The position numbers and the translations under genes are program-made. The notes under the pieces are model-generated. The model had not been told where the DNA came from. It searched no databases and saw only the letters and a list, made by a program, of their open reading frames with translations. A stretch of 64,000 nt of DNA, taken from positions 1 through 64,000 of the IMG/VR virus record IMGVR_UViG_3300032116_000001, one strand, 5' to 3'. Positions 41,066-59,068 of the stretch are shown here, piece after piece; position 1 is the first letter of the stretch; every line of letters begins with the position of its first letter.

Positions 41066-41188
41066 GTAAATTGACAGGAAACTAATCGGGGCAATGAAGC
41101 CCTGATTTTTTATAACTTTCTACGATTGTGCGGCACGATCATTATAAAAATCCCCCTTATTAATCGGCTCAATTTACTATAATGATAT

Positions 41189-41527
41189 ATGTACCACGTA
41201 GACGATTGCGTTATCGGAAAAGAAATTGCAAGTCAGGCTGAATATCATATCAATGTTTATGACTATGACGTTCGGTTATGTTCCGATGGCTGTTGCATTG
41301 AGGCGCGGACGGCAGCTGAACTTTGGAGCAACGACTGTAAAACTTTTCTAACCGAAGATGTGGATGGGTTTTGCAATAGTGGCGAGGCCGCTCAGAAGGT
41401 AATCAATTTGGCCAAGGCGCGTGGCCTCAATGTTCATCGAGGTAATACGGCGATCTATGTGGACGGCGATAGAGATTGTTCTAACGAATTGATTTACGGA
41501 TTGAAAAAATTTCCCCTAGATTACTGA
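41189..41527 (+). CDS. hypothetical protein
   Basis: Promoter-like motif upstream. Confidence 0.65.
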   Translation: MYHVDDCVIGKEIASQAEYHINVYDYDVRLCSDGCCIEARTAAELWSNDCKTFLTEDVDGFCNSGEAAQKVINLAKARGLNVHRGNTAIYVDGDRDCSNELIYGLKKFPLDY

Positions 41528-41551
41528 GACAAGAGGCATATATAAACTACC

Positions 41552-42292
41552 ATGACAATCGAACACGATAACATCGAAGAGCGAGTTGGAAAGGGAACTT
41601 TAATTCGTATTTCCAAGCTGCTTACCATGGCGAAGGATAAGCGCACGAACGAGAATGAAGCCCATAGCGCTATGCAATCGGCTCTTGCGCTTTTGTCTCG
41701 GTATAACATTACGGCTTCTGATGTTGAGAATTCGGGCATTTTCGAGGAAGCAGTGGGTTCTGAATCTTTTAATCCAACTGAAAATCGAAATCACTCCACA
41801 TGGCGATCCCAGCTAATCAATTCCATCGCAAGCACTCACTTCTGTCATGTCTATCGACGAAACGGGGGCGAGTTTATTCTGACTGGTAAGGAAACTAATC
41901 GTGCCGCCGCGATGATGCTTTTTCAGTATCTTTCCGTCGTGATTGAAGAAAATGCCCTTCAGGCTGTCCGCGAATACGACGGATGGGAATCGAAAAAGAC
42001 TTATGGCAATGCCTATCGGCTTGGAATGGTGACTCGAATTAATGAACGACTTATTGACCAAAAGCGCCAAATTATTCAAGAGGCTTCATCCAATAACACT
42101 GAAATTGTTGCTGTCAATCCTTATGAACAGGCCGAAAAAGAAAATCAAGCCTATGTCAAATCGAAGGGCGTAAAACTGTCGTCACACGCCTCAAGCAGTA
42201 ATCTTGGAAGTGGCGCGGGTTGGCATCGAGGGCGCAAAGATGGCGAGCGCGTTGGGCTTACCGCTGGGCGAGCACTAGGATATAAAAAGTGA
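41552..42292 (+). CDS. DUF2786 domain protein
   Basis: RISKLLTMA...NENEAHSAMQSALALLSRYNI; AYRLGMV; GWHRGRKDG. Confidence 0.8.
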   Translation: MTIEHDNIEERVGKGTLIRISKLLTMAKDKRTNENEAHSAMQSALALLSRYNITASDVENSGIFEEAVGSESFNPTENRNHSTWRSQLINSIASTHFCHVYRRNGGEFILTGKETNRAAAMMLFQYLSVVIEENALQAVREYDGWESKKTYGNAYRLGMVTRINERLIDQKRQIIQEASSNNTEIVAVNPYEQAEKENQAYVKSKGVKLSSHASSSNLGSGAGWHRGRKDGERVGLTAGRALGYKK

Positions 42293-42717
42293 GAGATACG
42301 CAAAAAGCCAAATTTTACAAATTCGAGGACTATATCATCAAGCGATTCCTCCAAAAAGAACTACATGATGGACTTGAATTTCGAGAAATCGAAGGGCTTG
42401 TTGGAAGAATCTGCCATTCTTATAATGTCCGCCCGCCAAAGATAAAGGTCGGTCGGCAGAATTCGAGCAAAGCCTACTACAAAACGATTGACCATAGTAT
42501 CACGCTTCCGCCATGGGCTCAGAGAACATGGACGGTAGTCCATGAAACAGCTCATGCAATTACTTATGGGAAAGGATATAAGGACCCTGGGCACGATGGT
42601 GATTTTGTTGGAGTATGGGTAGAGCTTTTTTCAAGAATGTATGACATCCCCAAGGAAACTCTTGAGTCGGAAGTTAAGCTGGCGGGATTGAGATATGTCA
42701 AATTTTCCCCCAAATAA
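42289..42717 (+). CDS. SprT-like HExxH zinc metallopeptidase
   Basis: ITLPPWA...VVHETAH...GHDGDF. Confidence 0.75.
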   Translation: MRDTQKAKFYKFEDYIIKRFLQKELHDGLEFREIEGLVGRICHSYNVRPPKIKVGRQNSSKAYYKTIDHSITLPPWAQRTWTVVHETAHAITYGKGYKDPGHDGDFVGVWVELFSRMYDIPKETLESEVKLAGLRYVKFSPK

Positions 42718-42742
42718 ATCAGAAAGAAATCATATATAAGAC

Positions 42743-42958
42743 ATGAACACCAAGCAAAATCAGGTCGCAGATGACATTTATAATCGGCTTTCCAGTTCCG
42801 CGCCTGGGTTTTATCGATATTGGTCTGATACGGTTGACCGATCAGTGGCCCAAGCACTAATCAAAAAGGGACCATTTTTCAGTTACGGCAATTCTTGGCG
42901 ATTCAAGGCCGAAAGTCTCGGGGCTGGAATGTATCGTGTCAAGATCATTGAAGCCTAG
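42743..42958 (+). CDS. hypothetical protein
   Basis: Promoter motif upstream. Confidence 0.65.
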   Translation: MNTKQNQVADDIYNRLSSSAPGFYRYWSDTVDRSVAQALIKKGPFFSYGNSWRFKAESLGAGMYRVKIIEA

Positions 42959-43029
42959 TCCCGATCAGGCCATCTTCATAAAAATCCCTTATTTTTATCG
43001 TTTCGATTCGATATAAAAAGGGAGGCTAA

Positions 43030-43482
43030 ATGATTACCCTTTTCAAGTTCGAGACCGAAGATGACGGCACGATTATCATTCCGATGGAGAAAATCGGAGT
43101 CACTATCAAGGACCTACAAGATGCCTTCAAGGAGGCAAAAGAACACGCCCAAGACGAATATGATGTAGAGCTGACCAAAGACACGATTTTCACAGTCGAA
43201 GAAGTCCACGGCCTGAAAGATTTTCTTGAGAAATACACTCTAATCGAGCGTCCGACGGCGAAGGCTGGCAAACCGTTCTCTAAAGCCGTTTTTGACCCTG
43301 ATTTGCATACCCTTCCCGAAGTTGCAGACCAGAACCAAGTCTGGACCTGGACCGATTGTGATGATGGCGGAAGTTATCTGATTCAAGGATACCATCATGC
43401 CAATCGCTTGGGCTATATCTTTACTGAAAACAAAGATGGAGAACCAGTGCCGATTGATGGAAACTCCTACTTTGTAGACTAG
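43030..43482 (+). CDS. hypothetical phage protein
   Basis: GGAGG SD; VWT...GYHHANRLGY. Confidence 0.7.
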   Translation: MITLFKFETEDDGTIIIPMEKIGVTIKDLQDAFKEAKEHAQDEYDVELTKDTIFTVEEVHGLKDFLEKYTLIERPTAKAGKPFSKAVFDPDLHTLPEVADQNQVWTWTDCDDGGSYLIQGYHHANRLGYIFTENKDGEPVPIDGNSYFVD

Positions 43483-43850
43483 GTGACTGGGAACAAGAAA
43501 GGGGGAAGTAACTCCCTCTTTCTTTATGACTTTCCGTGATTATGCGCCACGATCATTAAAAATCCCCTATATCTTATATTCCAATCGGATATATAAGATA
43601 TAATGAAAACCAAACATGTTTTTCGAGTTTACCCCAAGAATGCAACATCTTCCGAGGATGCTTTGGTAATTGAGAAAACCATAAGCCCGAAATCTGTCCT
43701 TCGAGTAATGGGAAACCTTCTTGGCAAGTATAATGCTTCAGAAGTGGCTTTATTGAAATCCGAGGACAAATAAGACTTTTTTAACAAAAAGTCCCAAAAT
43801 CATAGGACGATTTTGTTTTTTGATCGTATAATAGATAAGGACACTTTATT

Positions 43851-43943
43851 ATGAAGACCCACACCACATCAAATACGAATATGGTCTTCACCCGACGCAA
43901 TTCCGCGACGGGCGTCCAACAACGCTGTCGGCGTTCCGCTTAA
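43851..43943 (+). CDS. Gln/Arg/Cys leader peptide MKTHTTSNTNMVFTRRNSATGVQQRCRRSA
   Basis: AAGGAC SD; CAA CAA CGC TGT CGG CGT codon run; upstream of tRNA-Gln x2, tRNA-Arg x2 and tRNA-Cys. Confidence 0.75.
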   Translation: MKTHTTSNTNMVFTRRNSATGVQQRCRRSA

Positions 43944-44032
43944 GTCGGGCTGACACGTTACCACCTGCAAGTAACTTCTTTTTCGAAGAATTAGCCCGCT
44001 CTCTGAGCGAGACGTCGATTATCATCTCGTGC

Positions 44033-44106
44033 TCGGGGATCGTCTAGAGGCAGGACTCTGGTCTCTGGAACCAGAAGCGGTGGTTCGAATCCATCTCTCC
44101 GAGCCA
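44033..44106 (+). tRNA. tRNA-Gln (CTG)
   Basis: TCGGGGA/TCTCCGA-GCCA; CTGGT-CTCTGGA-ACCAG. Confidence 0.93.
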
Positions 44107-44113
44107 GCTTCAC

Positions 44114-44199
44114 TGGGTCTTAGGCGAATTGGTAGAGCCGCCTGTCTTTGGAACAGGACTCCTGAAAAGGTGGAGGTTCGAATCCTCCCGACCCAGCCA
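44114..44199 (+). tRNA. tRNA-Gln (TTG) with enlarged variable arm
   Basis: CCTGT-CTTTGGA-ACAGG; GCCA end. Confidence 0.88.
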
Positions 44200-44271
44200 A
44201 TTAAAGGCTTTATGCATTTTGAAAAAATAATTAAAAAAGGCTTTCTTAACAGAAGTACATAATTAAAACGA

Positions 44272-45057
44272 GTGATTCAAACTTCCAATAAGAAAACAAG
44301 AGTAAAGCGCAGTCGAATTTGGACGATGCCTAAAGACGAGTTCGCTCAACTAGTGGCCTCAAGTCAAACTTATGTCGAAATTCTCCGAGCCATTAACTAC
44401 ACCATACGAGGAGGAGCTTTTCGAATTTTAAAAGAACGAATTGCGACAGAAATGATCGACGATTCACATATATTAAAGAATGGAAGGCAAACCATTTATG
44501 CCCATAGATTCAATACTCGGTCAGATGACGATATATTTTGCGAAAATTCTACATACAATAGTGGCCCTGCCCTGAAAAAGAGAATGATTAAGCTAGGCTT
44601 ACCTGAAGAATGCACAAAATGTGGGCTTGGTGCAACATGGAATGATGAACCTCTATCTCTGCAAGTAGACCATATCAATGGGGTGCGCAACGATAACAGA
44701 TTAGAGAATTTGAGGCTTCTGTGCCCAAATTGTCATTCTCAAACCGAAAATTTTGCTGGCAGAAAGTTGAACGCAAAAAACAAATCATGTCCAGAATGCT
44801 GCGCTAAGATCAGTGGATACCGTAAAGATCAGAGATGCCAATCTTGTGCCAATAAGATCAGGTCTAGAGAAATGCAACTAATATCAAAACCATCAAAAGA
44901 CGAGCTTCAAGATATGTTGTGGAAAATGCCCGCGACTAGGATTGCTAAGATATACAATGTGTCCGATAAAACAGTTGGTAATTGGGCTAAATCCTACAAA
45001 ATTGACAAACCGAGCCGTGGACACTGGGTCAAAAAAAATACTCCCCCCCCCTTGTAG
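44272..45057 (+). CDS. HNH homing endonuclease with C-terminal zinc-finger/HTH
   Basis: LQVDHINGVRNDNRLENLRLLCPNCHSQT; ATRIAKIYNVSDKTVGNW. Confidence 0.9.
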   Translation: MIQTSNKKTRVKRSRIWTMPKDEFAQLVASSQTYVEILRAINYTIRGGAFRILKERIATEMIDDSHILKNGRQTIYAHRFNTRSDDDIFCENSTYNSGPALKKRMIKLGLPEECTKCGLGATWNDEPLSLQVDHINGVRNDNRLENLRLLCPNCHSQTENFAGRKLNAKNKSCPECCAKISGYRKDQRCQSCANKIRSREMQLISKPSKDELQDMLWKMPATRIAKIYNVSDKTVGNWAKSYKIDKPSRGHWVKKNTPPPL

Positions 45058-45123
45058 CTTAATGGATAGAGCGCAGCACTTCGGATGCTGATGTTATGGG
45101 TTCGAGTCCTATCGAGGGGGCCA
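45048..45123 (+). tRNA. tRNA-Arg (TCG)
   Basis: CAGCA-CTTCGGA-TGCTG; overlaps the HNH stop. Confidence 0.9.
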
Positions 45124-45134
45124 AAATTTAAAAC

Positions 45135-45210
45135 ACGCCTGTAGCTCAGTGGATAGAGCATCAGCTTGCGGAGCTGAGGGTCGGAGGTTCGAACCCTCTC
45201 AGGCGTGCCA
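45135..45210 (+). tRNA. tRNA-Arg (GCG)
   Basis: TCAGC-TTGCGGA-GCTGA; GCCA end. Confidence 0.92.
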
Positions 45211-45216
45211 ATATAC

Positions 45217-45291
45217 GGCCACGTACCCAAATGGTTAAGGGCTCCCTCTGCAAAAGGGATGTTGCGAGTTCGATTCTCGCCGTGGCCTCCA
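45217..45291 (+). tRNA. tRNA-Cys (GCA)
   Basis: GGCCACG/CGTGGCC-TCCA; U73 discriminator. Confidence 0.95.
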
Positions 45292-45335
45292 AAAATCCCC
45301 TATATTTTTGTCACAATCGGATATATAGTTAGAGA

Positions 45336-45902
45336 ATGACCCAGATTCAAATCGAAGCCGCGAAGCAAATGAAAAAGGCCTGCTATCGGAGTCGCGGGAC
45401 CTTAATCAAAGCAATTCTGGCTTATGTCGAATACCTGATGCGATGTTCGGATTGCCCGCGCAATTGGCCCAAGCACAATCAAGTGAACGTTTCTGCCGAA
45501 ACTCTAAAGTCTCTTGCGTGGCTTTACGGCAATTATCATACTGCGGTTTTAGGACAGAAGTTAAACAACCTTCAGTTTTGGATTGAAGAAAGTGGTCGTC
45601 AAATCCCGAGCGAATCTATCGAAGACTATCATGTAAACTCTCTTGACAATAGGATGCTTACCCGAAGAGAGATTTGGGCTGGTGAGATTTTGAGTCACTT
45701 GGTTTTTGCGATTGTCTTTCCCGAAGAAATGGCTCAGACGGGGCTGACTGCTGATGGAATGAATCAAAGATTCGCGGAACTTGATTATGATTTTAACTTG
45801 GTGCTTGAAGATGCTTCAGAAGGCTACGGGACGATTTGCGCATGGATGTCTAAATCAACATCGGTTGAAGTCTTGCGAGACATCTGGCACTTAAACAAGT
45901 AA
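45336..45902 (+). CDS. hypothetical protein
   Basis: Promoter motif; terminator at 45910-45942. Confidence 0.7.
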   Translation: MTQIQIEAAKQMKKACYRSRGTLIKAILAYVEYLMRCSDCPRNWPKHNQVNVSAETLKSLAWLYGNYHTAVLGQKLNNLQFWIEESGRQIPSESIEDYHVNSLDNRMLTRREIWAGEILSHLVFAIVFPEEMAQTGLTADGMNQRFAELDYDFNLVLEDASEGYGTICAWMSKSTSVEVLRDIWHLNK

Positions 45903-46021
45903 GTTGATAAAAATACCCCTGTCCACCAAGGGGTATTTTTTATTACTTTCTACGATTATGGTTCACGATCATTATAAAAAATCCCCTGTTTTCGAGAAAT
46001 CAAAACAATATATAAAATAGA

Positions 46022-46261: not shown

Positions 46262-46262
46262 A

Positions 46263-46592: not shown

Positions 46593-46640
46593 AAATCCTT
46601 TCTTTTCATTGATGCAATCGGATATATGATTTAGGTCACG

Positions 46641-46925: not shown

Positions 46926-47019
46926 CCAAGAGTTTGTTGCAATATAATTATTTTTCACGACAAAATGATCGTGCCGCATAACCATAGAAAGTTATAAAAA
47001 AGAAGGGGGCAGTGCCCCC

Positions 47020-47706
47020 TTAGTGTTTGAGAAAAGCAATATCTTTCTTATGCTTGGGATTGAAGCACAGACGACAGGCCGCGCAATTTGTTTTCTTATC
47101 ACTTCCTTTATGAAGTGCCAAGTCATAAGGGCAAAGAGTCGTATTATCGTCCTGGTCTGCAATCGTATCAATGACTTGCGCGGTTCGGAATCCGTTATCC
47201 TTCGCAATCTTGCGCTCAATCGGAGACTCTACAGAGGCCACAATATGTAGGTTTTCGGGGAAACTTCCCTTGGCATAACTGAAGCCCGCCGCAATCATAC
47301 AACGCACGTCATGAGTATACGTCCATACCGTCACGTCGGGATTCTGCTTGCACCATTCAATAACTTCCGTTAGATACGGCACGTCTAGCGCATGAACACC
47401 GTTCCCGTCAGAAGTAAAGAAGTCGCCAGAAGTATGCAAACGAACCAATCTGGCACCTTTTGAAGTCAGGCGGTCAAGGTCATCATGCCGCGCCGCAGAC
47501 TTTTTTTGTTGCTGATTTACAAGAAACTTCCGAGTGTAACACCCTCCGCCCTTACTCGGCAAGTGAGGACAGGTGCCAGGACAGGTGCCTTCACCCTTGC
47601 CAGCATCCCCGACAGGGCGATAAGTCGTCGCCACCTTATTGAGTTTATCCTTGGGGTCGCTCAGTTTGGAGTTCTGCGACCAAGGAGAAATCAAAGTCGT
47701 GTTCAT
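47020..47706 (-). CDS. gene product 88-like (radical-SAM-related Fe-S) protein
   Basis: NSKL; TCPGTCP...CY; VRLHTSGDF; WTYT; CP...CAACRLC...IAFLKH. Confidence 0.75.
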   Translation of the reverse strand: MNTTLISPWSQNSKLSDPKDKLNKVATTYRPVGDAGKGEGTCPGTCPHLPSKGGGCYTRKFLVNQQQKKSAARHDDLDRLTSKGARLVRLHTSGDFFTSDGNGVHALDVPYLTEVIEWCKQNPDVTVWTYTHDVRCMIAAGFSYAKGSFPENLHIVASVESPIERKIAKDNGFRTAQVIDTIADQDDNTTLCPYDLALHKGSDKKTNCAACRLCFNPKHKKDIAFLKH

Positions 47707-47823
47707 GCTTTATATATCCGATTGTGCTACGGCAGAAAGGGGATTTTTTATGACTTTCTAAGGTTATGTGCCACGATCATAAAAAATCCCTTGCTTTTTG
47801 TGTTTCAAGCGGATATATAAGAT

Positions 47824-48300
47824 ATGTTGATTTTGCCTAAGTTTCACAGCCGATTTGGTGATAAGGGTTTTGCACGCACGCTAGGCAGGCTTATCAGATT
47901 TTATTTTTGGCCTGTTGCCTTTTTTGTCATTTCTCTTGTCTGCCGATTTCAGACTAACCATCATGCAGCGTTTATCTTTAGTGTAGCCACACTGGGAGTG
48001 GTAATCGTTCTGTGCGTTTTATCGGGGTTCGTTGCAAAACTTTCTGAGTCAAGCAATGAACAAGTAGATGCTTTTTGGGCTTTTCTTTCGCATACGGCAA
48101 AGGGCATTTCTGTTGGGTTTTCGCTTTCTGTTTTGAGTTTCATCTTGTGCGTGGCAAGCGTTGTAATTTATAACACCCAAGTCAATGACTTGGTGTCTAT
48201 AACTCTATCGTCTCTTATCGTGGCAAATCTTGTGGTAATGGGCTCTATCGTAAAAGAAACCTTTGAAGACATCGTGCTTGCTTTTAGGGAGCAAAAATAA
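47824..48300 (+). CDS. multi-pass membrane protein
   Basis: 4 TM; promoter motif. Confidence 0.7.
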   Translation: MLILPKFHSRFGDKGFARTLGRLIRFYFWPVAFFVISLVCRFQTNHHAAFIFSVATLGVVIVLCVLSGFVAKLSESSNEQVDAFWAFLSHTAKGISVGFSLSVLSFILCVASVVIYNTQVNDLVSITLSSLIVANLVVMGSIVKETFEDIVLAFREQK

Positions 48301-48394
48301 TGCGACACTATATCATTTTTATGACTTTCTACGATTGTGTGGCACGATCATAAAAAATCCCCCTAATAAAGCTGAGTAATCGGATATATAATGT

Positions 48395-48474
48395 GGGGCA
48401 AATAGCTCAGTAAAGACATATGGGAATGTAACAGTAGAGGTTTCCGCGTATGTTCAAATCCTGTTGCTCCACCA
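48395..48474 (+). ncRNA. tRNA-Ala-like mini RNA lacking an anticodon arm
   Basis: GGGGCAA/TTGCTCC-ACCA with G3:U70; own promoter. Confidence 0.55.
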
Positions 48475-48515
48475 AAAATCCCCTATATTTTCCGCGTTCA
48501 TGCCATATATAAACT

Positions 48516-48698: not shown

Positions 48699-48737
48699 AA
48701 CCATTTTTTGAGGAAAAAATCGAAGGAGAAAATCGAA

Positions 48738-49055: not shown

Positions 49056-49192
49056 AACAAAAGCAAAAGACAATGGTATCTAAGAAAATGATGCCATTGT
49101 CTTTTGCGAAAAAATCGAAAAATCGTGGCACACAATCGCAGAAAGTCATAAAAAATCCCTTATCTTTGAGATTCTAATCGGATATATAAATT

Positions 49193-49604: not shown

Positions 49605-49723
49605 TAAGGGCAATTCGTTGAAAAGCGAAAAGTCCTTTTTTCACGCCTTAATGATCGTGCCGCACAATCGTAGAAAGTCATAAAAAATGGGGGCCAATCC
49701 CCCATTTTTTATCTTAGTCCTTT

Positions 49724-50599: not shown

Positions 50600-50738
50600 T
50601 AGTCTGCCTCTCTTTATATATCCGATTAGACTACGATAGAAAGGGGATTTTTTATGGCTTTCTGAGATTATGGGCCACGATCATTAAAAATCCCCTTTTC
50701 AAGTAAATTCATATAATATAATAGAAAGAAAGGCAAAA

Positions 50739-51064: not shown

Positions 51065-51079
51065 TCACAAGAGAGAAAT

Positions 51080-51570: not shown

Positions 51571-51665
51571 AGGTTCAAACAAAAAAGAGGGCATTGCCCT
51601 CTTTTTTATAACTTTCCATGATTATGGGCCACGATCATTAAAAATGGAAACAAAAAAATGAGACC

Positions 51666-52057: not shown

Positions 52058-52146
52058 ACTTTATATATCCGATTAGACCACGAAAAACAAGGGATTTTTC
52101 AATAATCGTGACACATAATCTCAGAAAGTTATAAAAAATCCGCTTC

Positions 52147-52587
52147 CTAAAAGGAAACGGATTTGAGTGTGTCTAGTATGGCTTCGTTCGATTTGATTTC
52201 GGCTTCCATTTCTTTAAGTCTTTGTTTAGCCCGAGGTATCGAATCCGATAAACGCCTAATTCTATCCTTTCTCCACTTTTCAAGATTCCCCCGCAAAATG
52301 TCATTGTCCAAAATCGCTTTCACCACCAAGTCCTGAAGTTCTTGAGGCACTTGAAACGACTGGCGTCCAGGTCCATGTTTATTGGGCTCCCATCCTTTGA
52401 AACGCCATTCACCGTTATCAAAAGTTGCGCTAATAACATGGCTCATTTGCCTAAAGTGAATAATAGGGGCATTTGAAAGAAGAGTTCCATAACCGACTTC
52501 AAACTGATTGTTATAGTGTCCTTCACCCATGAAACACACCCCATATTTGCCCAAATCACCTTGGTGGTTATAACATCTTGTGTTCAC
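52147..52587 (-). CDS. hypothetical protein
   Basis: Reverse promoter motif. Confidence 0.7.
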   Translation of the reverse strand: MNTRCYNHQGDLGKYGVCFMGEGHYNNQFEVGYGTLLSNAPIIHFRQMSHVISATFDNGEWRFKGWEPNKHGPGRQSFQVPQELQDLVVKAILDNDILRGNLEKWRKDRIRRLSDSIPRAKQRLKEMEAEIKSNEAILDTLKSVSF

Positions 52588-52627
52588 ACTTTATATATCC
52601 GATTAGGCCATGAAAAACAAGGGATTT

Positions 52628-52972
52628 TTATCGAACCCAGTGAATTGCCACGGTTCGCTCACCCTGTTGAAGCCCCAGCCCGTGAACACTTGGCTTGCTT
52701 ACAGCAATTTCACGCGCTTCCTCGAAAGTCTTAGTTACTAGGTCGCCAGTCAAATCATAAATGGCACTCCACGCTTCTGCATCTTGCTCAGACGCGAAAG
52801 TAGCCAAAAGACCAACCGTCATAGGGTCTGGCGCAGGAGTCGTTGCATTTACAGCCGCAAAACGACCACTACCAAGTGAAATCATCACTACAGCATCGGG
52901 GAAAGATTCATCCCCGCCAAGAACATCATTGACTTCAATGTCCAAATCACTCAGAATATCTTCGAGGGGCAC
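52628..52972 (-). CDS. hypothetical protein
   Basis: Reverse promoter motif. Confidence 0.7.
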   Translation of the reverse strand: MPLEDILSDLDIEVNDVLGGDESFPDAVVMISLGSGRFAAVNATTPAPDPMTVGLLATFASEQDAEAWSAIYDLTGDLVTKTFEEAREIAVSKPSVHGLGLQQGERTVAIHWVR

Positions 52973-53646
52973 CCTTTATATATCCGATTAGAACAAGAAA
53001 AACAAGGGATTTTTATGACTTTCTACAATCATGTGCCACACCCAAAGAACACACCAAAATCTCGGATGGAGCGAACACACTTTTGTGCGCCGCTCAAGCC
53101 GAGAAACATACAGAAAACAGAAAATGCCAGAATACTTAGATGCTACATGGTTTTGTTCTCCTCGATGGTGTTTCGCATATTGATTTGATTTTCCTTCGAG
53201 TTTAGAGCTGTTGCCAACTCTTCTTTATATATCCGATTAGAGCCATGCAAAAAGGGGATTTTTTATATAATGATCGTATCACATAATCTCGGAAAGTCAT
53301 AAAGAAAGGCCCCATTTTAGGGGCCTTGTTTTCTTAGACGCTAGTCGTCATAATCGTCATTCCGACGTTCTTTTCCTCGGCGGCGAGACCAATTTAGGTC
53401 CTCACGAGCATGCTTCCCCGCCTTTTCTTTCTTTCTCTTGTTTTTGATGTCTTTGGGCACTAGCCCCCAGTGTTTTTCTGGCCAATCCGAGTTTCGGTTG
53501 GGATTCATCATTACCCTCCTTTTTATATATCCGATTGAAACCATTCAAAAAGGGGATTTTTATAATGATCGTGGCGCATAATCGCAGAAAGTTATAAAGA
53601 AAGGGGCATTAGCCCCTAGTCTTTACTTATGCCCCAGAAGGCAACT

Positions 53647-53841: not shown

Positions 53842-53881
53842 TCTTTATATATCCGATTAGAACACGAAAGAAAAGGGATTT

Positions 53882-54277
53882 TTATGAAGCCCACTCGAAG
53901 CGATTCCGCTCAATATGATTCTGAAACACGCGGACAACGGCATCAATGTCCGTGAGTTTTTCATACTCCATATGAGTGTTGAGGCCACCACGGTAGTCCT
54001 TTTGCCCCTTAACGCATCGATAGTAGAACTCAGGTCGCGGAATGCTTCCACCCAGGTGAACATAAAGATTGTCCGAGTGCAAAATCACTTCACCAAGACA
54101 AGCCACGCCAGCCTTGTTTGAGCGAATAGAATACTGCCCGTCTCTCAGGCCAAGACCGTGAGCAATTTCTTCAAGATACTGCTTTGCAAGACGATGAAAA
54201 GTTCGCTTAGCCCTATCATTATAGCCACTATGGGTGGAAGCGATATGAGCCATCATCCTAATGTCTTTAACGTCCAT
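53882..54277 (-). CDS. hypothetical protein of mobile elements
   Basis: IRSNKAGVACLGEVILHSDNLYV...YYRCVKGQKDY. Confidence 0.7.
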   Translation of the reverse strand: MDVKDIRMMAHIASTHSGYNDRAKRTFHRLAKQYLEEIAHGLGLRDGQYSIRSNKAGVACLGEVILHSDNLYVHLGGSIPRPEFYYRCVKGQKDYRGGLNTHMEYEKLTDIDAVVRVFQNHIERNRFEWAS

Positions 54278-54408
54278 GGTTTGTTCCTACATTATATATC
54301 TGATTGAAATACAAAAGAAAAGGGATTTTTTATAATGATCGTGGCGCATAATCTCAGAAAGTTATAAAGAAAGCCCCGTTTTCAGGGGCATTTCTTTGAA
54401 GTCAGTTA

Positions 54409-54870
54409 TTAGAACCCAAAAGACGGGGTTTTCAGCAAGGTGGGCAGTTCTTGAATCGGCACCAACTTCACCTTCCCGTTGGTCTTTTGGTGGACCAAAT
54501 CCGCCCACTTTTCATCCAAGTGCGTGTTAGCGTTGTAAACGATGAGCCCGCCGTCGTAATTCCCGATAATGCTCATCAATCGGGCCACATTGTTCTTCAC
54601 CATAGACCCGATGTAAAGTTGCTGGGTGGCGAAGATTTCAACGGCAATTTTCTTGCCGTTAGTCACCACTTCAAGGTCAATGGTGTGTTCAAATCCAGGC
54701 CGCTCAACGACCGCTTGCGGAACAACCATACCCTTTCCAACGACGGCCTCGAAGGCCTGTTGGACAACAAGTTCGAGCTGAGAGTGCTCGTTGCTGGTGG
54801 AGCGGAAAAGCTTTAGGGGCCAATTGTCGGGGATTTGAAGAAGGGCGACGATGGTTGCAATCTCAGTCAT
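54409..54870 (-). CDS. possible PD-(D/E)XK nuclease-fold protein
   Basis: TIDLEV...KIAVEIF; GAGG SD; reverse promoter. Confidence 0.5.
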   Translation of the reverse strand: MTEIATIVALLQIPDNWPLKLFRSTSNEHSQLELVVQQAFEAVVGKGMVVPQAVVERPGFEHTIDLEVVTNGKKIAVEIFATQQLYIGSMVKNNVARLMSIIGNYDGGLIVYNANTHLDEKWADLVHQKTNGKVKLVPIQELPTLLKTPSFGF

Positions 54871-55275
54871 GATTGTTTTCCTCTCCTTATATATCAGATT
54901 GGGCTACGAAAGAAAGAGGATTTTTTATGACTTTCTGCGATTGTGTGACACAATTCAATGCAAGCCAAATATAAACAAAATCCCTGGCCACGGAGCCTCA
55001 TGCTCATGCGCGACCAGGGTGCCGTCAGTTTTTGGATAATCTCTATACTGTTTGCAACCAATATAGAACCACGTAATCGCGTCCTGAGACTGACCGTTGC
55101 ATTTTCACGCTCTGCAACTAGAGGGGAAGCGGATACTCTTTGGTGTGCAGTCCACTTCTCAGCACTAGCGAGGTTGAGGCCTCGTTCTTCTTATATATCC
55201 GATTAGGCCAATGTAAAAAGGGGATTGTTTATAAAAAAACCCCCGCATTTTCAAACACAATCGGATATATAAAAT

Positions 55276-55674
55276 ATGACCGAAGTCTTTGGACAGACCA
55301 CAGTCGCCGAGGCACTGCACTCGTCAGTTCACGAAGTCGCAAATCTCATTCTTGACAAAGGTTACCAAATCTTTACAGCTGACTGCCGCCCCGACATTCA
55401 CTTCGCATGGCCCAATCGTGACTTTTACTTCACTGACGGGAAGCGCGTTGGATATTGCCAGTATGACAATCTCAATGGACTTGTATTTTGTCAAGTGTTG
55501 AAGGGTCATGGGTTTGGGAATGTCTACGATTATAAAAGCCCCCTGAGCGATTTAGTAGAAAAGACCCTAAACGAAATGCATGAACGACAATATCAAGACT
55601 TTGCAGAGTTTTTGGAATACAGAAAGCAAATTGGTGTACTGTATGAAGTGAAGTCTTTTGAAGTGAAGTTGTAA
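55276..55674 (+). CDS. hypothetical protein
   Basis: Promoter motif upstream. Confidence 0.7.
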   Translation: MTEVFGQTTVAEALHSSVHEVANLILDKGYQIFTADCRPDIHFAWPNRDFYFTDGKRVGYCQYDNLNGLVFCQVLKGHGFGNVYDYKSPLSDLVEKTLNEMHERQYQDFAEFLEYRKQIGVLYEVKSFEVKL

Positions 55675-55771
55675 ATCTCAGGGGCAAAATAAGCCCTTGA
55701 TATTTACTTTTATAACCAAAATGATCGTGCCACACAATCGTAGAAAGTTATAAAAAAGACTAGGGCAAGCC

Positions 55772-55960
55772 CTAGTCCAAATCCTCAAGAAGTTCAGCGT
55801 CGCCTTCATCCATCTCGTTGTCAGAATACCATCGAGAAAATGGGATACTGGCTTTGAAATCTTCCCATGCTTGCCCCAATTCATCTGCTGAATTTACAGA
55901 GAATGATGCCGTATAAGCGGCACTACTGTCTTTATCACAAGCCCGAAAGATTCCAGTCAT
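55772..55960 (-). CDS. hypothetical protein
   Basis: Reverse promoter motif. Confidence 0.65.
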   Translation of the reverse strand: MTGIFRACDKDSSAAYTASFSVNSADELGQAWEDFKASIPFSRWYSDNEMDEGDAELLEDLD

Positions 55961-56000
55961 GCCTTATATATCCGATTGGGACAAAACAAACGGGGGATTT

Positions 56001-56396
56001 TTAGATTTGACTCTCTCGAACAGGAATCCAGTTCTTTTGACGTTCAACTCTTTGGCCAAACTTACCAACCGTGGAAATCAACTCACGAAGTGAAGCGTAT
56101 CCCTTCTCTCGCTCATTGCCCTCGACAATCCCGTAAAACAGGAAGTCATGAGCCTCGGACTGGCGGGCAGTCGAATCTTCGGGGTGAATCATCACACCAT
56201 TTTCGTCCACGGGGCTGCCCTCGATTATAAACCATCGCCAAGTAGGAGCAACAAAGAACAGTTTCAAAACCACCATCGGATTCGGATTCGAGTCTTGAGA
56301 GTAGAGCGGAGGAAGAATGTCCAAAATCTCATCGGGGAGCAAGTGAGAAGCCTGCTTCATGAGTTCAGAGTAGGAAAGTTCAGCGGTGGTGGACAT
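56001..56396 (-). CDS. DUF2958 domain protein
   Basis: LPPLYSQ...VVLKLF...WRWFIIE...FYGIV.G.E.E.GY.SL.EL...VER. Confidence 0.8.
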   Translation of the reverse strand: MSTTAELSYSELMKQASHLLPDEILDILPPLYSQDSNPNPMVVLKLFFVAPTWRWFIIEGSPVDENGVMIHPEDSTARQSEAHDFLFYGIVEGNEREKGYASLRELISTVGKFGQRVERQKNWIPVRESQI

Positions 56397-56451
56397 TTTC
56401 TGTTAACCTCTGTCTTATATATCCGATTAGAATACGAAAGAAAGGGGTTTT

Positions 56452-56676
56452 TTATAATGAGCTTGGCCTATACTCACGGACCACAGGTGCATCATAGACA
56501 TCGTTGGAAATGTCACTCTGAAGGTCACCACAATCCATTATTTTGCTGCACTTATCAAAAAAAGATTTATCAATGCTTTCACCAAGAAGTTCAGCACACA
56601 AAGCCGCGACCTGAAAGTTGTATTCGCTCGGAACACCAGATTCAGCCATGAGCTTTAGGTTTCGCATTTTATCCAT
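56452..56676 (-). CDS. hypothetical protein
   Basis: Reverse promoter motif. Confidence 0.65.
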   Translation of the reverse strand: MDKMRNLKLMAESGVPSEYNFQVAALCAELLGESIDKSFFDKCSKIMDCGDLQSDISNDVYDAPVVREYRPSSL

Positions 56677-57152
56677 ATTTTCATATATCCGATTAGAACA
56701 CGAAAAACAAGGGTTTTTTTATAATGATCGTGTCACACAATCGTAGAAAGCCATAAAGAAAAAGACCCGTCCATCCATGACGGGCCTTTCTTCCTCTTCT
56801 TTTTGTACTTGTATTTTTTTATTCTGGATTTTTGATAGAGTGTGACTTGGGAAACCCAAACAAGATACAAATGAAAATGGTTAATTACTCCATCCTCATA
56901 ATCTCTTGCATCTGATATACGCCCATCGTATACTTCGACACCGCTAAGTTTCAAGACAACGCGCCCGCCTTGCAAGGGACTCGAACCCAAGCTTCGATGT
57001 TAAACGTTTCTCAGATTGTGAAACTTAATTCACTATCACACTCTTCTTTATATATCCGATTAGAGCCATGCAAAAAGGGGATTTTTTAATGATCGTGGCG
57101 CACAATCGTAGAAAGTCATAAAAAAGACGGATGCTCATATTGAGCATCCAAT

Positions 57153-57353
57153 TTAGAGTCTGCGGTATACCGTTACCCCATTGCGATTATGAGACTTCAT
57201 ATAGCCTAGATTTTCCAGTTTTTCAAGTCTCTCAGCCAAAATCACATCATCAAAAGACACTTTAAGGGACAATTGATAGAGCGTTTTTCGCTCGTTGGTG
57301 CCACCGAATTGTCTCAGAATGGCATGGTCGTATGCGGTCAGATTCTTATCCAT
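57153..57353 (-). CDS. small winged-helix protein
   Basis: LTAYDHAIL...LEKLENLGYM...VYR. Confidence 0.6.
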   Translation of the reverse strand: MDKNLTAYDHAILRQFGGTNERKTLYQLSLKVSFDDVILAERLEKLENLGYMKSHNRNGVTVYRRL

Positions 57354-57571
57354 TAGGACACTCGCTCAAGCCGAATCACACCCGCATCATCGAGTTGCAT
57401 AAGTGCTGGGCAAACGACGTAAGACCTATTGCAGTAATAGCCGTCAGCAGGAAATGCAACACAATCCCCATGAACATCATGGTTTTGTTCGCGCCAAGGC
57501 ATCATATCCATGCCTTTCAGAAGTTCCTTGATGGCTTGCTTGAGAATGTCATTTTCTTCTTGAACCGTCAT
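57353..57571 (-). CDS. hypothetical protein
   Basis: Reverse promoter motif. Confidence 0.65.
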   Translation of the reverse strand: MTVQEENDILKQAIKELLKGMDMMPWREQNHDVHGDCVAFPADGYYCNRSYVVCPALMQLDDAGVIRLERVS

Positions 57572-57923
57572 ATCTTATATATCCGATTAGACCACGAAAG
57601 AAAGGGGATTTTTAATCAACGGCGTAAACAGAAAAGTTTAGCCCCAACAAATAATTGTTGGGGCTAACGACATGCCTATCTTGTCTTGGTTTTTGAGTTT
57701 TCAGTTACACTTTCTTTCTCATGCTGGTAAGGTTCGTCCAGCTACTATAAGGGCTACAGGGCCTGGTCATCGAGCACAATCTGAGTCTCGCGCTTTCCTC
57801 AGTCTTGTTACTTTATATATCCGATTAGAGCCATGCAAAAAGGGGATTTTTTAATGATCGTGCCACATGATCACGGAAAGTCATAAAGAAAGACAGATAA
57901 CTTGTATCTGCCTTTCCAAGTTT

Positions 57924-58328
57924 TCAATCCCCGATGGAGTAGTATTGTTTGAACACCACTACTTGAATGTTCGCCATTATGCAGTGAACAGAAATGTCCC
58001 CGCCCTGCCATGCATTGCCAATGTCATAAAGAACATTTGCAAGTTCGGAGTTTTCAAGCCCAGCCGTGGTGAAGAGATTGTATCTGACCGCACTGTAAGA
58101 CGCATTGCCCCAGGCCTCTTCAACATTTTGGATTCGATTGAACGCATTGTCGCTTGAAATGTCAATCCAAAGCCGCTCTCCATTTGACAAATCGGCGATA
58201 TAGTATTCTCCCCGATTGGTTACAACCTTGCGAATGGCATGATTCAGAAAGTGTTCGCCCGACCGCGTGGGAAGGATTTTTTCAGGCTGAGTAGGATACT
58301 CGGCTGTGATTGTGGGGACTTTGATCAT
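57924..58328 (-). CDS. hypothetical protein
   Basis: Reverse promoter motif. Confidence 0.65.
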   Translation of the reverse strand: MIKVPTITAEYPTQPEKILPTRSGEHFLNHAIRKVVTNRGEYYIADLSNGERLWIDISSDNAFNRIQNVEEAWGNASYSAVRYNLFTTAGLENSELANVLYDIGNAWQGGDISVHCIMANIQVVVFKQYYSIGD

Positions 58329-58470
58329 CTTGACTTTCCACCTAGTTTATATATCCGATTAGAATACAAAAGACAAGGGATTTTTTTAATGATCGTGCCA
58401 CATAAAAACAGAAAGCCATAAAAAATCCCCTTTCTGCATGGCTCCAATCGAATATATAAAGAGAGGAACA

Positions 58471-58953
58471 ATGACTACTGAACAAGTCGCCGCCGCCCTC
58501 GCCACCAAGCGCAAGGGAACAATATTCACCCTTCGCGTTGCACGTCCCGCCAAACTTCGCGCTGGTTCGCGAGATATGGATATTGTCAAGGCTTCCGTTA
58601 TGCAAGGCATGGCGAACACTGACTATGCCAGCCGTGGCCCCGTTCGCGAAGCCGTGGCCCTGGGAGAACGTGATGCCCCTGCCCTGCCCAAGCATATTGA
58701 AAAGACATTCACGGAAAACGACGTGAAGTTTTGGAAAGGCCACAATGGCGAAATCTACTTGCCCGTTTGCCTTACGGGGAATCATGCCGAAGTCACCTGG
58801 CTTCAGGATGGCGAGGAAGTCAGCCTGGACGAAATCAAGGACCATCTGCTTGCTTCCGAATATGCAAGCCGCACCGATAAGGATGACCTTGCAGAACGCG
58901 GCCAAGTGCCCTTTATCGGCGTAAATGTCAAGCACATCGAATCGGTAAACTAA
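58471..58953 (+). CDS. hypothetical phage protein
   Basis: Promoter plus GAGG SD; terminator at 58970-58993. Confidence 0.75.
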   Translation: MTTEQVAAALATKRKGTIFTLRVARPAKLRAGSRDMDIVKASVMQGMANTDYASRGPVREAVALGERDAPALPKHIEKTFTENDVKFWKGHNGEIYLPVCLTGNHAEVTWLQDGEEVSLDEIKDHLLASEYASRTDKDDLAERGQVPFIGVNVKHIESVN

Positions 58954-59068
58954 GCCAGACCATAAAGACTAGGGGCGCAAGCCCCTTTCTTTATAACTTT
59001 CTATGATTGTGTGCCACGATCATTATAAAAATCCCCTTTCTTTTGTGTTCTAATCGGATATATAAAAC

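What the first reader, a model, noticed from the sequence alone, without database searches (positions are those of the whole stretch)
41107..59030. Second dispersed ~40-bp element TTTTATGACTTTCTACGATTATGNGNCACGATCATTA between terminators and promoters
About 25 copies by eye, e.g. 7023, 8427, 41107, 43523, 45938, 47746, 48317, 50650, 51603 and 58990, with reversed copies at 46965, 49650, 53270, 53565, 54335, 55721, 56724, 57088, 57855 and 58390. They become dense at 46-59 kb, exactly where cassettes switch orientation repeatedly. They are too long and conserved for UP elements. They could be recombination sites (integron-like cassette boundaries) or binding sites for a phage regulator or DNA-entry protein.
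Basis: partly seen in the sequence, partly recalled or inferred. Interest (0 to 1): 0.65.

Follow-up and report, generated by a model that had tools for sequence, protein, structure and literature searches.

The report
Conserved spacer element between phage gene units
A 36-base DNA element sits in the gap between almost every pair of neighbouring early gene units in an uncultured freshwater giant phage and is conserved in its relatives, so it is probably a protein-binding boundary site, though its function has not been tested.

Summary
The window is the first 64 kb of a 378.8-kb jumbo-phage record. It holds 26 full copies of element E, which consists of TTTATGACTTTCT, ACGATTRTG, three variable bases (NGN) and CACGATCATTA. 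It also holds two tandem arrays of a 25-bp short form. All copies lie in the first 59 kb, and none is expected by chance.

E is the middle module of a composite junction: intrinsic terminator, E, then a phage-specific promoter (P1) that fires at or next to the start codon. The T-run at E's left end is always fused to a terminator T-tract or to a reversed P1 box. The distance from E to the next feature varies. There is one E per junction in tandem, convergent and divergent arrangements, and E occurs in both orientations.

Relatives with 40-45% rIIA identity carry a recognisable E homologue at the same junctions. A more distant relative has an unrelated palindrome there.

I found no integrase, resolvase or Y1 transposase, no hairpin covariation and no promoter-like two-block structure.

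A 97%-identical relative lacks cassettes that E/P1 repeats bound in this phage, and the tandem array varies in copy number between samples.

Best reading: E is a protein-binding boundary or shut-off site in a junction resembling the PeSL cassettes of T4-type phages. Its repetition also drives cassette shuffling.

The parts
4671..4806 (+). Tandem array of five 25-bp short-form E units (left half joined directly to CACGATC) plus one variant unit. It lies after the terminator at about 4640-4670 and upstream of the rIIA-like gene.
   Evidence: Copy number is 5 in the window and in L142 but 2 in L141 and L143, a 75-bp difference.
7025..7060 (+). E copy at a terminator-E-promoter junction between the rIIA-like and rIIB genes.
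   Evidence: Orthologous E copies occur in L144, L146, L147 and L148.
8427..8462 (+). E copy after the rIIB terminator. Its right half is diverged and is followed by three copies of a 12-bp repeat.
34555..34639 (+). Two short-form units followed by one full E (34604-34639), then a P1 promoter at 34668.
35320..35355 (-). E copy inverted relative to the flanking + strand units (terminator of the Macro gene, inverted E, promoter). Its right half is partly degenerate.
41109..41144 (+). E copy at a terminator-E-promoter junction (terminator at 41084-41107).
43523..43558 (+). E copy at a terminator-E-P1 junction.
45939..45974 (+). E copy at a terminator-E-promoter junction.
46963..46998 (-). E copy between two convergent terminators, with no promoter beside it.
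47747..47782 (+). E copy between divergent P1 promoters. It is the left direct repeat flanking the 158-aa cassette.
48318..48353 (+). E copy that forms the right direct repeat of the 158-aa cassette, 571 bp from the copy at 47747. It is followed by a P1 promoter and a tRNA-like RNA.
49117..49152 (-). E copy inverted relative to the flanking + strand units. Its left half abuts the box of P1 at 49178, and its right half is degenerate.
49649..49684 (-). E copy after the ArdC terminator at a convergent junction.
50651..50686 (+). E copy between divergent promoters.
51605..51640 (+). E copy between convergent terminators.
52100..52135 (-). E copy at a terminator-E-P1 junction.
53012..53047 (+). E copy inverted relative to the flanking - strand units, with a degenerate right half.
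53268..53303 (-). E copy at a terminator-E-P1 junction. Its E-P1 block is about 90% identical over 86-92 bp to those at 57122 and 57887.
53563..53598 (-). E copy at a terminator-E-P1 junction.
54333..54368 (-). E copy at a terminator-E-P1 junction.
54924..54959 (+). E copy inverted relative to the flanking - strand units, with a degenerate right half.
55719..55754 (-). E copy between convergent terminators.
56722..56757 (-). E copy at a terminator-E-P1 junction.
57087..57122 (-). E copy at a terminator-E-P1 junction.
57852..57887 (-). E copy at a terminator-E-P1 junction.
58387..58422 (-). E copy between divergent P1 promoters.
58990..59025 (+). E copy at a terminator-E-P1 junction (terminator at 58971-58986).
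57048..57150 (-). Example of a complete composite junction, read on the - strand: terminator hairpin 57150-57128, T-run fused to E 57122-57087, A-tract and CCCC box 57085-57077, then the -10-like block 57059-57048.

Best explanation
E is a cis-acting DNA site that occupies the untranscribed gap at nearly every boundary between early transcription units of this jumbo phage. It is the middle module of a composite junction: intrinsic terminator, E, then phage-specific promoter P1.

The most likely mechanism (inferred, not shown) is that a phage-encoded, sequence-specific DNA-binding protein shared by the clade binds E. Bound at the unit boundaries, it would act as an insulator or shut-off site. 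It would block RNA polymerase that reads through a terminator and/or occlude the adjacent P1 upstream region. Mycobacteriophage repressors act in this dual way at operators and 'stoperators'.

Because E plus P1 form about 75-bp repeats dispersed in both orientations, they also supply homology for gain, loss and shuffling of the small cassettes, as described for the PeSL cassettes of T4-type phages.

Shown:
- the anatomy of the junctions
- the restriction of E to one region of the genome
- conservation of E in relatives
- variation in tandem-array copy number
- cassette differences between close relatives, at the level of gene calls

Inferred:
- that a protein binds E
- what that protein does
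For: 1. **Real and restricted.** There are 26 full copies and 2 arrays with 85% column identity, none expected by chance, and all lie in the first 59 kb of 378.8 kb.
2. **Autonomous module.** Spacing inside E is fixed (left block to right block, 25 bp). The distance from E to the P1 box varies by 13-18 bp here and by 7-40 bp in relatives. P1 also occurs without E, directly after stop codons.
3. **One E per junction, in all four junction types.** The counts are terminator|promoter about 17, terminator|reversed terminator 4, reversed promoter|promoter 3, and reversed promoter|reversed terminator 4. In tandem junctions E is forward about 17 times and inverted 4 times. A function that does not depend on orientation fits a bound protein better than a promoter or a terminator.
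4. **Selection.** Phages with only 40-45% rIIA identity and 46-55% GC keep a homologous element (consensus CCTTTCCAGTTTCAGGGGGCAC). It has the same register after the T-run, sits at the three orthologous junctions around rIIA/rIIB, and shares invariant positions with E. A relative's variable region has 17 copies in 14.5 kb with the same four junction types.
5. **Lineage-specific consensus.** Each lineage has its own consensus shared by all its copies, as expected if the sites co-evolve with a trans-acting factor.
6. **A different element in the same slot.** A more distant relative (rIIA 36% identical, canonical sigma-70-type promoters) has an unrelated quasi-palindrome of about 70 bp in the same slot, in both orientations.
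7. **Recombination by-product.** The tandem array has 5 or 2 copies in different samples. The 97%-identical relative lacks the 158-aa cassette flanked by E-P1 repeats that lie 571 bp apart in this phage; the net shift is 579 bp. It also differs by about 1 kb at window positions about 54277-55276. Three E-P1 blocks are about 90% identical over about 90 bp.
Against: - No binding protein has been identified. Ten conserved neighbouring proteins gave no significant Pfam match, DNA-binding or otherwise, and a protein-atlas search of the conserved 239-aa neighbour gave no lead.
- No RNA data exist for this phage, so neither read-through nor shut-off can be seen.
- A roadblock is not needed at divergent junctions, and a promoter operator is not needed at convergent ones. 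One protein would have to do both jobs, or an architectural or topological role would have to be assumed.
- Strong terminators at 13-24 kb have no E.
- A lineage-specific consensus could also come from gene conversion among copies, without any trans-acting factor.
Confidence: 0.4

Rival explanations
1. E has no function of its own beyond being repeated. It persists as the homology tract through which cassettes are exchanged, in pure PeSL-type modular shuffling by general recombination.
For: - Cassette-level differences from a 97%-identical relative fall at E/P1-bounded segments.
- The tandem array varies in copy number.
- E-P1 blocks are homogenised.
- Cassette order is shuffled, and only 8 of 27 genes are shared with the relative's variable region.
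- The left and right contexts of E assort roughly independently.
- PeSL provides a precedent (PMC2839356, PMC4122927).
Against: - Homology alone does not explain why orthologous copies keep invariant positions and an exact register after the T-run across phages whose proteins are 40-45% identical.
- P1 alone would already supply about 48 repeats.
- In the rIIB-to-239-aa-gene interval, gene gains and losses do not fall at E.
Confidence: 0.2
2. E is part of the terminator. It would be a downstream DNA element that raises termination efficiency, either directly on RNA polymerase or through a termination factor.
For: - E's T-run is fused to the terminator T-tract, 3-5 nt after the stem, in 21 of 28 loci here and in all 14 copies examined around rIIA/rIIB in relatives.
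- E also follows terminators at convergent junctions that have no promoter.
- In the 40-60 kb region nearly all strong terminators carry E.
Against: - Seven of 28 loci here, and 5 of 17 in L159, have a reversed promoter and not a terminator on the left side of E.
- In 4 tandem junctions here and 4 in L159, E is inverted relative to the incoming transcription.
- Terminators at 13-24 kb lack E.
Confidence: 0.12
3. E is an upstream activating or UP-like site for the adjacent P1 promoter, bound by the RNA polymerase alpha subunit or by an activator.
For: - Either end of E abuts the A-tract and CCCC box of a P1 in 24 of 28 loci. The reversed left half (GAAAGTCAT followed by the A-tract) recurs at fixed distance in front of 7 P1 copies.
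- Fragments resembling the right half lie before a few other P1 copies.
Against: - More than 20 P1 copies have no E and sit directly on the preceding stop codon.
- Spacing in the forward orientation varies over half a helical turn or more.
- Four loci here and several in relatives have no promoter on either side.
Confidence: 0.1
4. E is itself a promoter for one of the three phage sigma-like factors or for an unrecognised phage RNA polymerase. It would give a second temporal class of transcripts into the same genes.
For: - Contiguous conserved blocks of 22-36 bp resemble single-subunit polymerase promoters.
- The phage encodes three Sigma70_r2-containing ORFs.
- E is co-oriented with the downstream gene in about 17 loci.
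Against: - Eight of 28 copies point into a convergent terminator, with no gene downstream.
- There is no two-block structure with a variable spacer, and no -10-like block is shared with relatives.
- No copy lies in the other 320 kb of the record, where middle and late genes lie.
- No RNA polymerase was found. PF00562 gave no match. PF00940 gave no match, but that search had no positive control. PHROGs scans of the ten largest ORFs found none.
- The N4-like hairpin is not under selection.
Confidence: 0.08
5. E is a selfish miniature repeat, like REP elements or MITEs, that inserts into AT-rich intergenic spacers. Alternatively it is the site of an integron-like site-specific recombinase.
For: - The ends of E are imperfect inverted repeats (TTTTTATGA and TCATTAAAAA).
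- Copies are dispersed in both orientations, and arrays exist.
Against: - No tyrosine integrase, serine recombinase or Y1 (RAYT-type) transposase is present in the record.
- There is no covariation in the palindrome.
- Orthologous positions are conserved across the clade.
- E is absent from 185,579 bacterial species genomes apart from 5 single matches, all in unrelated sequence. I estimate that about 4 such matches are expected by chance.
- E is absent from other IMG/VR contigs.
Confidence: 0.08

Closest known systems
PeSL (promoter-early stem-loop) cassettes of T4-type phages (Arbiol et al. 2010, PMC2839356; Comeau et al. 2014, PMC4122927)
   Same: - Both are small composite terminator/promoter motifs repeated in the intergenic gaps of variable regions full of small orphan genes.
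- In both, each cassette carries its own early promoter.
- In both, insertions and deletions between close relatives are bounded by the motifs.
- Neither system has a dedicated recombinase.
   Different: - PeSLs consist of a stem-loop, an AT-rich tract and a sigma-70-type promoter. The junction here has an extra module of about 36 bp with a strongly conserved sequence, fused to the terminator T-run.
- That module also stands alone at convergent junctions and is conserved in relatives.
- The promoter here is not sigma-70-like: it has a CCCC box and GATATATAA, with the start codon 3 nt downstream.
- The phage is not T4-like; it has a DnaE-type polymerase.
Operator/stoperator sites of Cluster A mycobacteriophage repressors, for example L5 gp71 (PMC9283540)
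   Same: - Both are asymmetric sites present in more than 20 copies in short intergenic spaces of a phage genome.
- Both lie next to promoters and at the ends of units.
- The proposed action is the same: block initiation and elongation.
   Different: - Stoperators are 13-mers spread over the whole genome of temperate phages. They are strictly co-oriented with transcription and have a known repressor.
- E is 36 bp and confined to one region of about 55 kb in a phage with no integrase.
- E's orientation is only biased (about 17:4), and no binding protein is known.
REP/BIME extragenic repeats of enterobacteria (from my own knowledge, not from a tool result)
   Same: Both are dispersed elements of about 35-40 bp with imperfect dyad symmetry, found at the 3' ends of units and between convergent genes in both orientations. 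A protein-binding or topological role has been proposed for REP/BIME elements.
   Different: - REPs are transcribed and lie upstream of or inside terminators, and they are linked to RAYT transposases.
- E lies after the T-run, its dyad is not under selection, and no Y1 transposase is present.
Integron attC sites
   Same: Both are repeated elements at the 3' boundary of small gene cassettes.
   Different: - There is no IntI-type integrase.
- There is no conserved folded structure.
- The cassettes have their own promoters and terminators and lie in both orientations.

Membership tests
PeSL-type composite regulatory cassette | A stem-loop terminator lies directly beside an early promoter in intergenic gaps. 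| tested here: met
   Terminator-like sites number 60 against 19.6 expected in 40.5-60.4 kb. They lie immediately upstream of E and P1.
PeSL-type composite regulatory cassette | The promoter is of sigma-70 type (TTGACA-N17-TATAAT or a close variant). | tested here: not met
   Sigma-70-like sites are not enriched (37 against 34.7 expected). P1 has a CCCC box 24 nt upstream of TCGGATATATAA in 43 of 48 copies.
PeSL-type composite regulatory cassette | The motifs are concentrated in variable regions of small orphan genes. | tested here: met
   All E and P1 copies lie in the first 60 kb. Only 8 of 27 genes are shared with the relative's region, and their order is shuffled.
PeSL-type composite regulatory cassette | Insertions and deletions between close relatives are bounded by the motifs. 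| tested here: inconclusive
   Gene calls of the 97%-identical relative lack the 158-aa cassette, which E-P1 repeats 571 bp apart flank in this phage; the net shift is 579 bp. The relative also differs by about 1 kb at another E/P1-bounded segment. No DNA of that contig was available. A third deletion is an HNH endonuclease gene and is not bounded by E.
PeSL-type composite regulatory cassette | Mini-circles form by exchange between neighbouring motifs. | not testable with these tools
   Raw-read runs did not contain the phage, and Logan contigs break at the repeats.
Integron attC / cassette array | A tyrosine (IntI-type) recombinase is present. | tested here: not met
   PF00589 gave no match in the record, while the control matched in 14 of 14 genomes. 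PF00239 also gave none. About 42 kb of the genome is missing from the record.
Integron attC / cassette array | The site is an imperfect palindrome maintained as a folded structure. | tested here: not met
   The 7-bp stem shows no excess over shuffles (185 of 500 shuffles reach it). The middle pair is unpaired in 15 of 25 copies.
Stoperator-type repressor sites | Many asymmetric sites lie in short intergenic spaces, at promoters and between genes. | tested here: met
Stoperator-type repressor sites | Site orientation is strictly tied to the direction of transcription. | tested here: inconclusive
   In tandem junctions E is forward about 17 times and inverted 4 times. In L159 the counts are 7 forward and 4 inverted.
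Stoperator-type repressor sites | A cognate DNA-binding repressor exists. | not testable with these tools
   Ten conserved neighbouring proteins gave no significant Pfam match.
UP element | An A/T-rich tract lies at a fixed position (-40 to -60) relative to the core promoter. | tested here: not met
   Spacing is variable. E is present at junctions without a promoter.
N4-type hairpin promoter | A conserved hairpin with a 5-7 bp stem and 3-nt loop is read by a giant virion RNA polymerase. | tested here: not met
   The hairpin-like dyad exists in the consensus but is not under selection and is absent in relatives. PHROGs scans of the ten largest ORFs found no polymerase.
REP/RAYT system | A Y1 (RAYT-type) transposase is present. 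| tested here: not met
   PF01797 gave no match, while the control matched in 6 genomes.

The most novel reading that the evidence does not exclude
E and its lineage-specific counterparts are the operators of a so-far-undescribed regulatory layer in a clade of widespread freshwater jumbo phages. A phage protein would bind once per inter-unit gap and insulate or silence the whole early cassette region, making a lytic-phage counterpart of the stoperator network. Alternatively, E is the target of a cassette-exchange system whose recombinase belongs to no known family.
Probability: 0.2. Interest if true: 0.8.

Novelty: new variant of a known kind. Interest (0 to 1): 0.6.

Why it matters
PeSL-type junctions in T4-type phages are explained as a terminator plus a promoter whose repetition permits shuffling. 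This case has a third module under clear purifying selection. It is fused to the terminator T-run, works in either orientation, is present once per boundary, and is replaced by a different conserved element in a more distant relative.

This suggests that boundaries between early units in these giant phages are actively organised by a bound factor, not just passively repeated. If so, it would reveal a way in which large phages insulate or switch off dozens of densely packed, strongly promoted cassettes.

The phage appears nearly identical in at least 14 freshwater studies from 2017 to 2025, so environmental material for testing exists. The element also gives a precise marker for following cassette turnover in natural populations.

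Tried and rejected
**Searches for relatives**
- Close phage relatives: megablast of 46-54 kb against INPHARED found nothing. tblastn with the polymerase and with rIIA found only hits of 36% identity or less.
- E pattern in IMG/VR: 2 matches, both in unrelated sequence and taken as chance. The P1 14-mer gave only single hits per contig, also taken as chance.
- E pattern in 185,579 species genomes: 5 matches, all in unrelated sequence and in line with my chance estimate of about 4.
- The search for related loci with the GP88-like protein found nothing in IMG/VR. With the 97% ArdC variant in JGI metagenomes it returned only this phage itself.
- The DNA of the 97%-identical relative was never obtained; its sample file was too large.

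**Reads**
- No RNA run holds the phage.
- The two raw-read runs had no reads of the phage.
- Logan contigs end at the identical P1/E repeats. The 'joints' listed are cross-matches of other copies. This gives no evidence for or against inversions.

**Strain comparison**
- Five contigs from different samples are 100% identical over 20.9 kb, so they give no polymorphism data.
- The only divergent patch, at window 100-1255, is not next to E.

**Readings of E that were rejected**
- Hairpin, cruciform or N4-like promoter: no covariation.
- Sigma-54, sigma-28, ECF and sigma-70 promoters, checked by eye on the alignments: no consistent second block, and the key positions vary.
- The mini-ORF starting at the ATG inside E: the ATG is absent in 9 of 25 aligned copies here and in most relatives.

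**Other negative results**
- Rfam at permissive threshold on 40-60 kb found nothing beyond tRNAs.
- Trans-acting factor: Pfam on 10 conserved neighbours and a protein-atlas search of the 239-aa conserved protein gave nothing.
- The genome search could not open the relative's ENA record.
- The large representative-protein search, structure prediction and complex prediction were not used, because no claim here rests on them.

Full report
**What the window is**

The window is bases 1-64000 of a 378,848-bp virus record.
- The record encodes a DnaE-type DNA polymerase, a ribonucleotide reductase, a large terminase, a portal protein, topoisomerase II and large structural proteins with Ig-like domains.
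- It also has three ORFs with a Sigma70_r2 domain, at about 109, 112 and 302 kb.
- No RNA polymerase was found. PF00562 gave no match. PF00940 gave no match, but that search had no positive control. PHROGs scans of the ten largest ORFs found none.
- No isolated phage is close. Polymerase identity is 36% or less and rIIA identity about 30% or less.
- Genes 4885-6984 and 7133-8386 are the rIIA-like and rIIB genes.
- The phage is common. The same 6 kb is held at 0.99 of sampled words by runs from 14 freshwater studies dated 2017-2025. Five contigs from different samples are 100% identical to the window over 20.9 kb.
- One ENA contig of 420,993 bp extends at least 25.8 kb upstream of window base 1. 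The record's start is therefore arbitrary, and about 42 kb may be missing.

**The observation**

The element, here called E, is real.
- Its left half matches 19 times with up to 3 mismatches, against 0.00 expected.
- Relaxed scans give 26 full copies, a tandem array of five 25-bp short forms at 4671-4806, a second small array at 34555-34603, and one fragment.
- An ungapped alignment of 25 copies has 85% column identity. Invariant columns are T1-T5, C8-C12, T18, G22, A27 and C28.
- No true copy lies beyond 59 kb in the record.
- No true copy lies in the 7 kb upstream of the window start.

**The neighbouring promoter, P1**

A second motif recurs 48 times in the window. It consists of an A-tract, AATCCCC, a variable spacer and then TCGGATATATAA.
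- In 43 of the 48 copies the box starts exactly 24 nt before TCGG.
- In 45 of 48 the first base after the motif is a purine.
- In 30 of 48 an ATG or GTG follows exactly 3 nt after the motif.
- A few copies carry TATAAT at the same register.
- One copy is followed after 3 nt by a tRNA-like RNA with an encoded CCA end.

Taken together, the bipartite shape, the fixed spacer, the back-to-back divergent pairs and the position after terminators make P1 a promoter. It would give leaderless or nearly leaderless mRNAs. This is inference; no RNA data are available.

Classical sigma-70 sites are not enriched (37 against 34.7 expected), whereas terminator-like sites are (60 against 19.6).

P1 often sits directly on the preceding stop codon with no terminator and no E. 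P1 therefore does not need E.

**Anatomy of the junctions**

- Spacing inside E is fixed, and box-to-(-10) spacing is fixed at 27. The distance from E to the box varies from 13 to 18.
- The T-run at E's left end is always fused to something:
  - in 21 loci, to the T-tract of an intrinsic terminator, 3-5 nt after the stem;
  - in 7 loci, to the A-tract of a P1 box pointing the other way.
- On the right of E there is a P1 in about 20 loci, or a terminator of a unit coming from the other side in 8.
- All four combinations occur, in about the numbers expected if left and right contexts were independent:

| Left of E | Right of E | Loci |
|---|---|---|
| terminator | promoter | about 17 |
| terminator | reversed terminator | 4 |
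| reversed promoter | promoter | 3 |
| reversed promoter | reversed terminator | 4 |

- There is one E per junction. All four convergent junctions have one, and three of four divergent junctions have one.
- In tandem junctions E is forward about 17 times and inverted 4 times. In the inverted cases its right half is degenerate.
- Nearly all strong terminators in 40-60 kb carry E. The few in 13-24 kb do not.

**Relatives**

A protein search with rIIA found a 97%-identical variant and a group at 40-45% identity. Four of the 40-45% group were fetched with their DNA context: L144, L146, L147 and L148, with GC of 46-55%.
- All four share the gene order around rIIA/rIIB.
- All four have, right after the terminator T-run at the three orthologous junctions, an element with consensus CCTTTCCAGTTTCAGGGGGCAC.
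- That element aligns to E without gaps. It shares the T-run, CTTTC, A14, T18, G22, G24 and CAC.
- Their P1 equivalent has a different box (AAAACTTTCCCCCTGAT) and a CCTATAT block a few bases before the ATG.
- Two of them also have the element at a convergent junction with no promoter.

The variable region of one relative (L159; ArdC 59% identical) has 17 copies in 14.5 kb. It shows the same four junction types and the same fusion of the left end to a T-run.

A more distant phage (L169; rIIA 36% identical; canonical TTGACA/TATAAT promoters and Shine-Dalgarno leaders) has a different element in the same slot. It is a quasi-palindrome of about 70 bp and occurs in both orientations.

A conserved element between terminator and early promoter is therefore a trait of the wider group. 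E is the version found in this lineage.

**What E is not**

- **Not a folded site.** The 7-bp dyad inside E shows no covariation: 185 of 500 shuffles reach the observed pairing. Its middle pair is broken in 15 of 25 copies, and relatives lack it.
- **Not integron-like or REP-like.** No tyrosine integrase, serine recombinase or Y1 transposase is present.
- **Probably not a promoter.** Eight of 28 copies point into a convergent terminator. There is no two-block structure, and there are no copies in front of the other 320 kb of genes.
- **Not an UP element.** Spacing is variable, and some junctions have no promoter.
- **Not borrowed from a host genome**.
- **Not in the literature.** No paper in the library holds the left-half or P1 strings; the few matches to the right-half string are in unrelated papers.

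**Recombination**

- The short-form array upstream of rIIA has 5 units in the window and in L142 but 2 units in L141 and L143.
- The gene calls of the contig carrying the 97% ArdC variant differ from this phage in three ways:
  1. The 158-aa gene at window 47824-48300 is absent. The net shift is 579 bp. The E copies at 47747 and 48318, and their P1 copies, are direct repeats 571 bp apart.
  2. About 1 kb more DNA, with other genes, lies at window positions about 54277-55276, a segment bounded by E and P1 copies.
  3. The HNH endonuclease gene at 44272-45057 is absent.
- These comparisons rest on gene calls. The DNA itself could not be fetched.
- Three E-P1 blocks are about 90% identical over about 90 bp.
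- Against the 59% relative, only 8 of 27 genes are shared, and their order and some orientations differ.
- In the conserved rIIB-to-239-aa-gene interval, the gene gains and losses do not fall at E.
- This matches the PeSL picture of shuffling by exchange between repeated regulatory junctions (PMC2839356, PMC4122927).

**Mechanism**

The features that need explaining are these:
- sequence conservation under selection across the clade
- one copy per inter-unit gap, whatever the directions of the two units
- tolerance of inversion
- fusion to a T-run but loose spacing on the other side
- restriction to the cassette region that uses P1

A site for a sequence-specific DNA-binding protein fits these features best. 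It would act as a boundary, either as a roadblock to read-through or by occluding the adjacent P1 upstream region. This resembles the operator/stoperator duality of mycobacteriophage repressors (PMC9283540). An architectural or topological role is an alternative.

I put about 0.4 on 'protein-binding boundary or regulatory site', and less on any specific action. The recombination role is a demonstrated-by-analogy by-product, not the reason for conservation. The rival explanations and their weights are listed separately.

**Limits**

- There are no RNA data and no informative reads.
- No binding protein has been identified.
- The host is unknown.
- Junction types were classified from motif scans, Prodigal-type gene calls returned by the look-ups, and my own reading. 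A few gene calls in the 51.6-52.1, 55.0-55.2 and 57.7-57.9 kb segments appear wrong.

Noticed in passing
window, 48 sites, e.g. 47783-47823, 52587-52628(-), 59028-59068: Promoter-like motif P1: an A-tract, AATCCCC, a spacer and TCGGATATATAA. The start codon lies exactly 3 nt downstream in 30 of 48 copies, and a purine is the first base after the motif in 45 of 48. This implies leaderless or nearly leaderless early mRNAs and a non-sigma-70 -35 region. Relatives use a different box (AAAACTTTCCCCCTGAT) with the same geometry.
   Followed up: partly
window 48395-48473 (+): A tRNA-like RNA starts 3 nt after a P1 motif. It has a GGGGCAA/TTGCTCC acceptor stem, D- and T-arm-like sequences and an encoded CCA, with an odd long middle part. 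ARAGORN and Rfam did not call it.
   Followed up: partly
window 57630-57812(-), 53047-53224(-), 54959-55190(-): Three P1-driven segments of 180-230 nt contain no convincing ORF. Two end in strong hairpins (MFE z-scores -3.2 and -2.3) and may be small RNAs or very small ORFs. Gene calls on the opposite strand there look spurious.
   Followed up: partly
window 20421-20624 (+): A group I intron matches Rfam RF00028 at 58 bits, above the gathering score.
   Followed up: no
window 18056-45291: There are fifteen tRNA genes, all on the + strand. They include clusters at 23.8-25.4 kb and 44.0-45.3 kb. The HNH endonuclease gene at 44272-45057 sits between tRNA genes and is absent from the 97%-identical relative.
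   Followed up: partly
window 32163-33443 and 34683-35264: A WGR-PARP-type poly(ADP-ribose) polymerase gene lies near a Macro-domain gene. Together they could write and erase ADP-ribosylation in the early region.
   Followed up: no
window 8465-8505: Three tandem copies of a 12-bp unit (CACTCTCCAAGT) lie directly after the E copy that follows rIIB.
   Followed up: no
window 100-1255; record start: This is the only stretch that differs from other assemblies (78 mismatches in about 1.2 kb). Other assemblies continue at least 25.8 kb upstream, and one contig is 420,993 bp long. The 378.8-kb record is therefore probably incomplete or has a chimeric end.
   Followed up: partly
whole window; runs X1-X20: The phage is nearly identical (0.99 of sampled words, and 100% over 20.9 kb in five contigs) in at least 14 freshwater studies from 2017 to 2025. 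This is unusually low diversity for an environmental phage.
   Followed up: partly
L169:5308-15688: A more distant relative (rIIA 36% identical) has a quasi-palindrome of about 70 bp between terminator and sigma-70-type promoter at 7 junctions. Its outer arms are ATTAACA/TGTTAAT and its inner arms are CTAAAAAATTC/GAATTTTTTAG. It occurs in both orientations.
   Followed up: partly
L144:4440-4500 and similar sites: In relatives the P1 box can double as the 3' arm plus T-run of a terminator hairpin, when an inverted copy of the box lies just upstream. Terminator and promoter then overlap.
   Followed up: no
L159:5736-6404 and 7662-8330: Two GP88-family paralogues lie in opposite orientation in the relative's variable region, whereas this phage has one (47020-47706). 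This points to an inverted duplication of a cassette.
   Followed up: no
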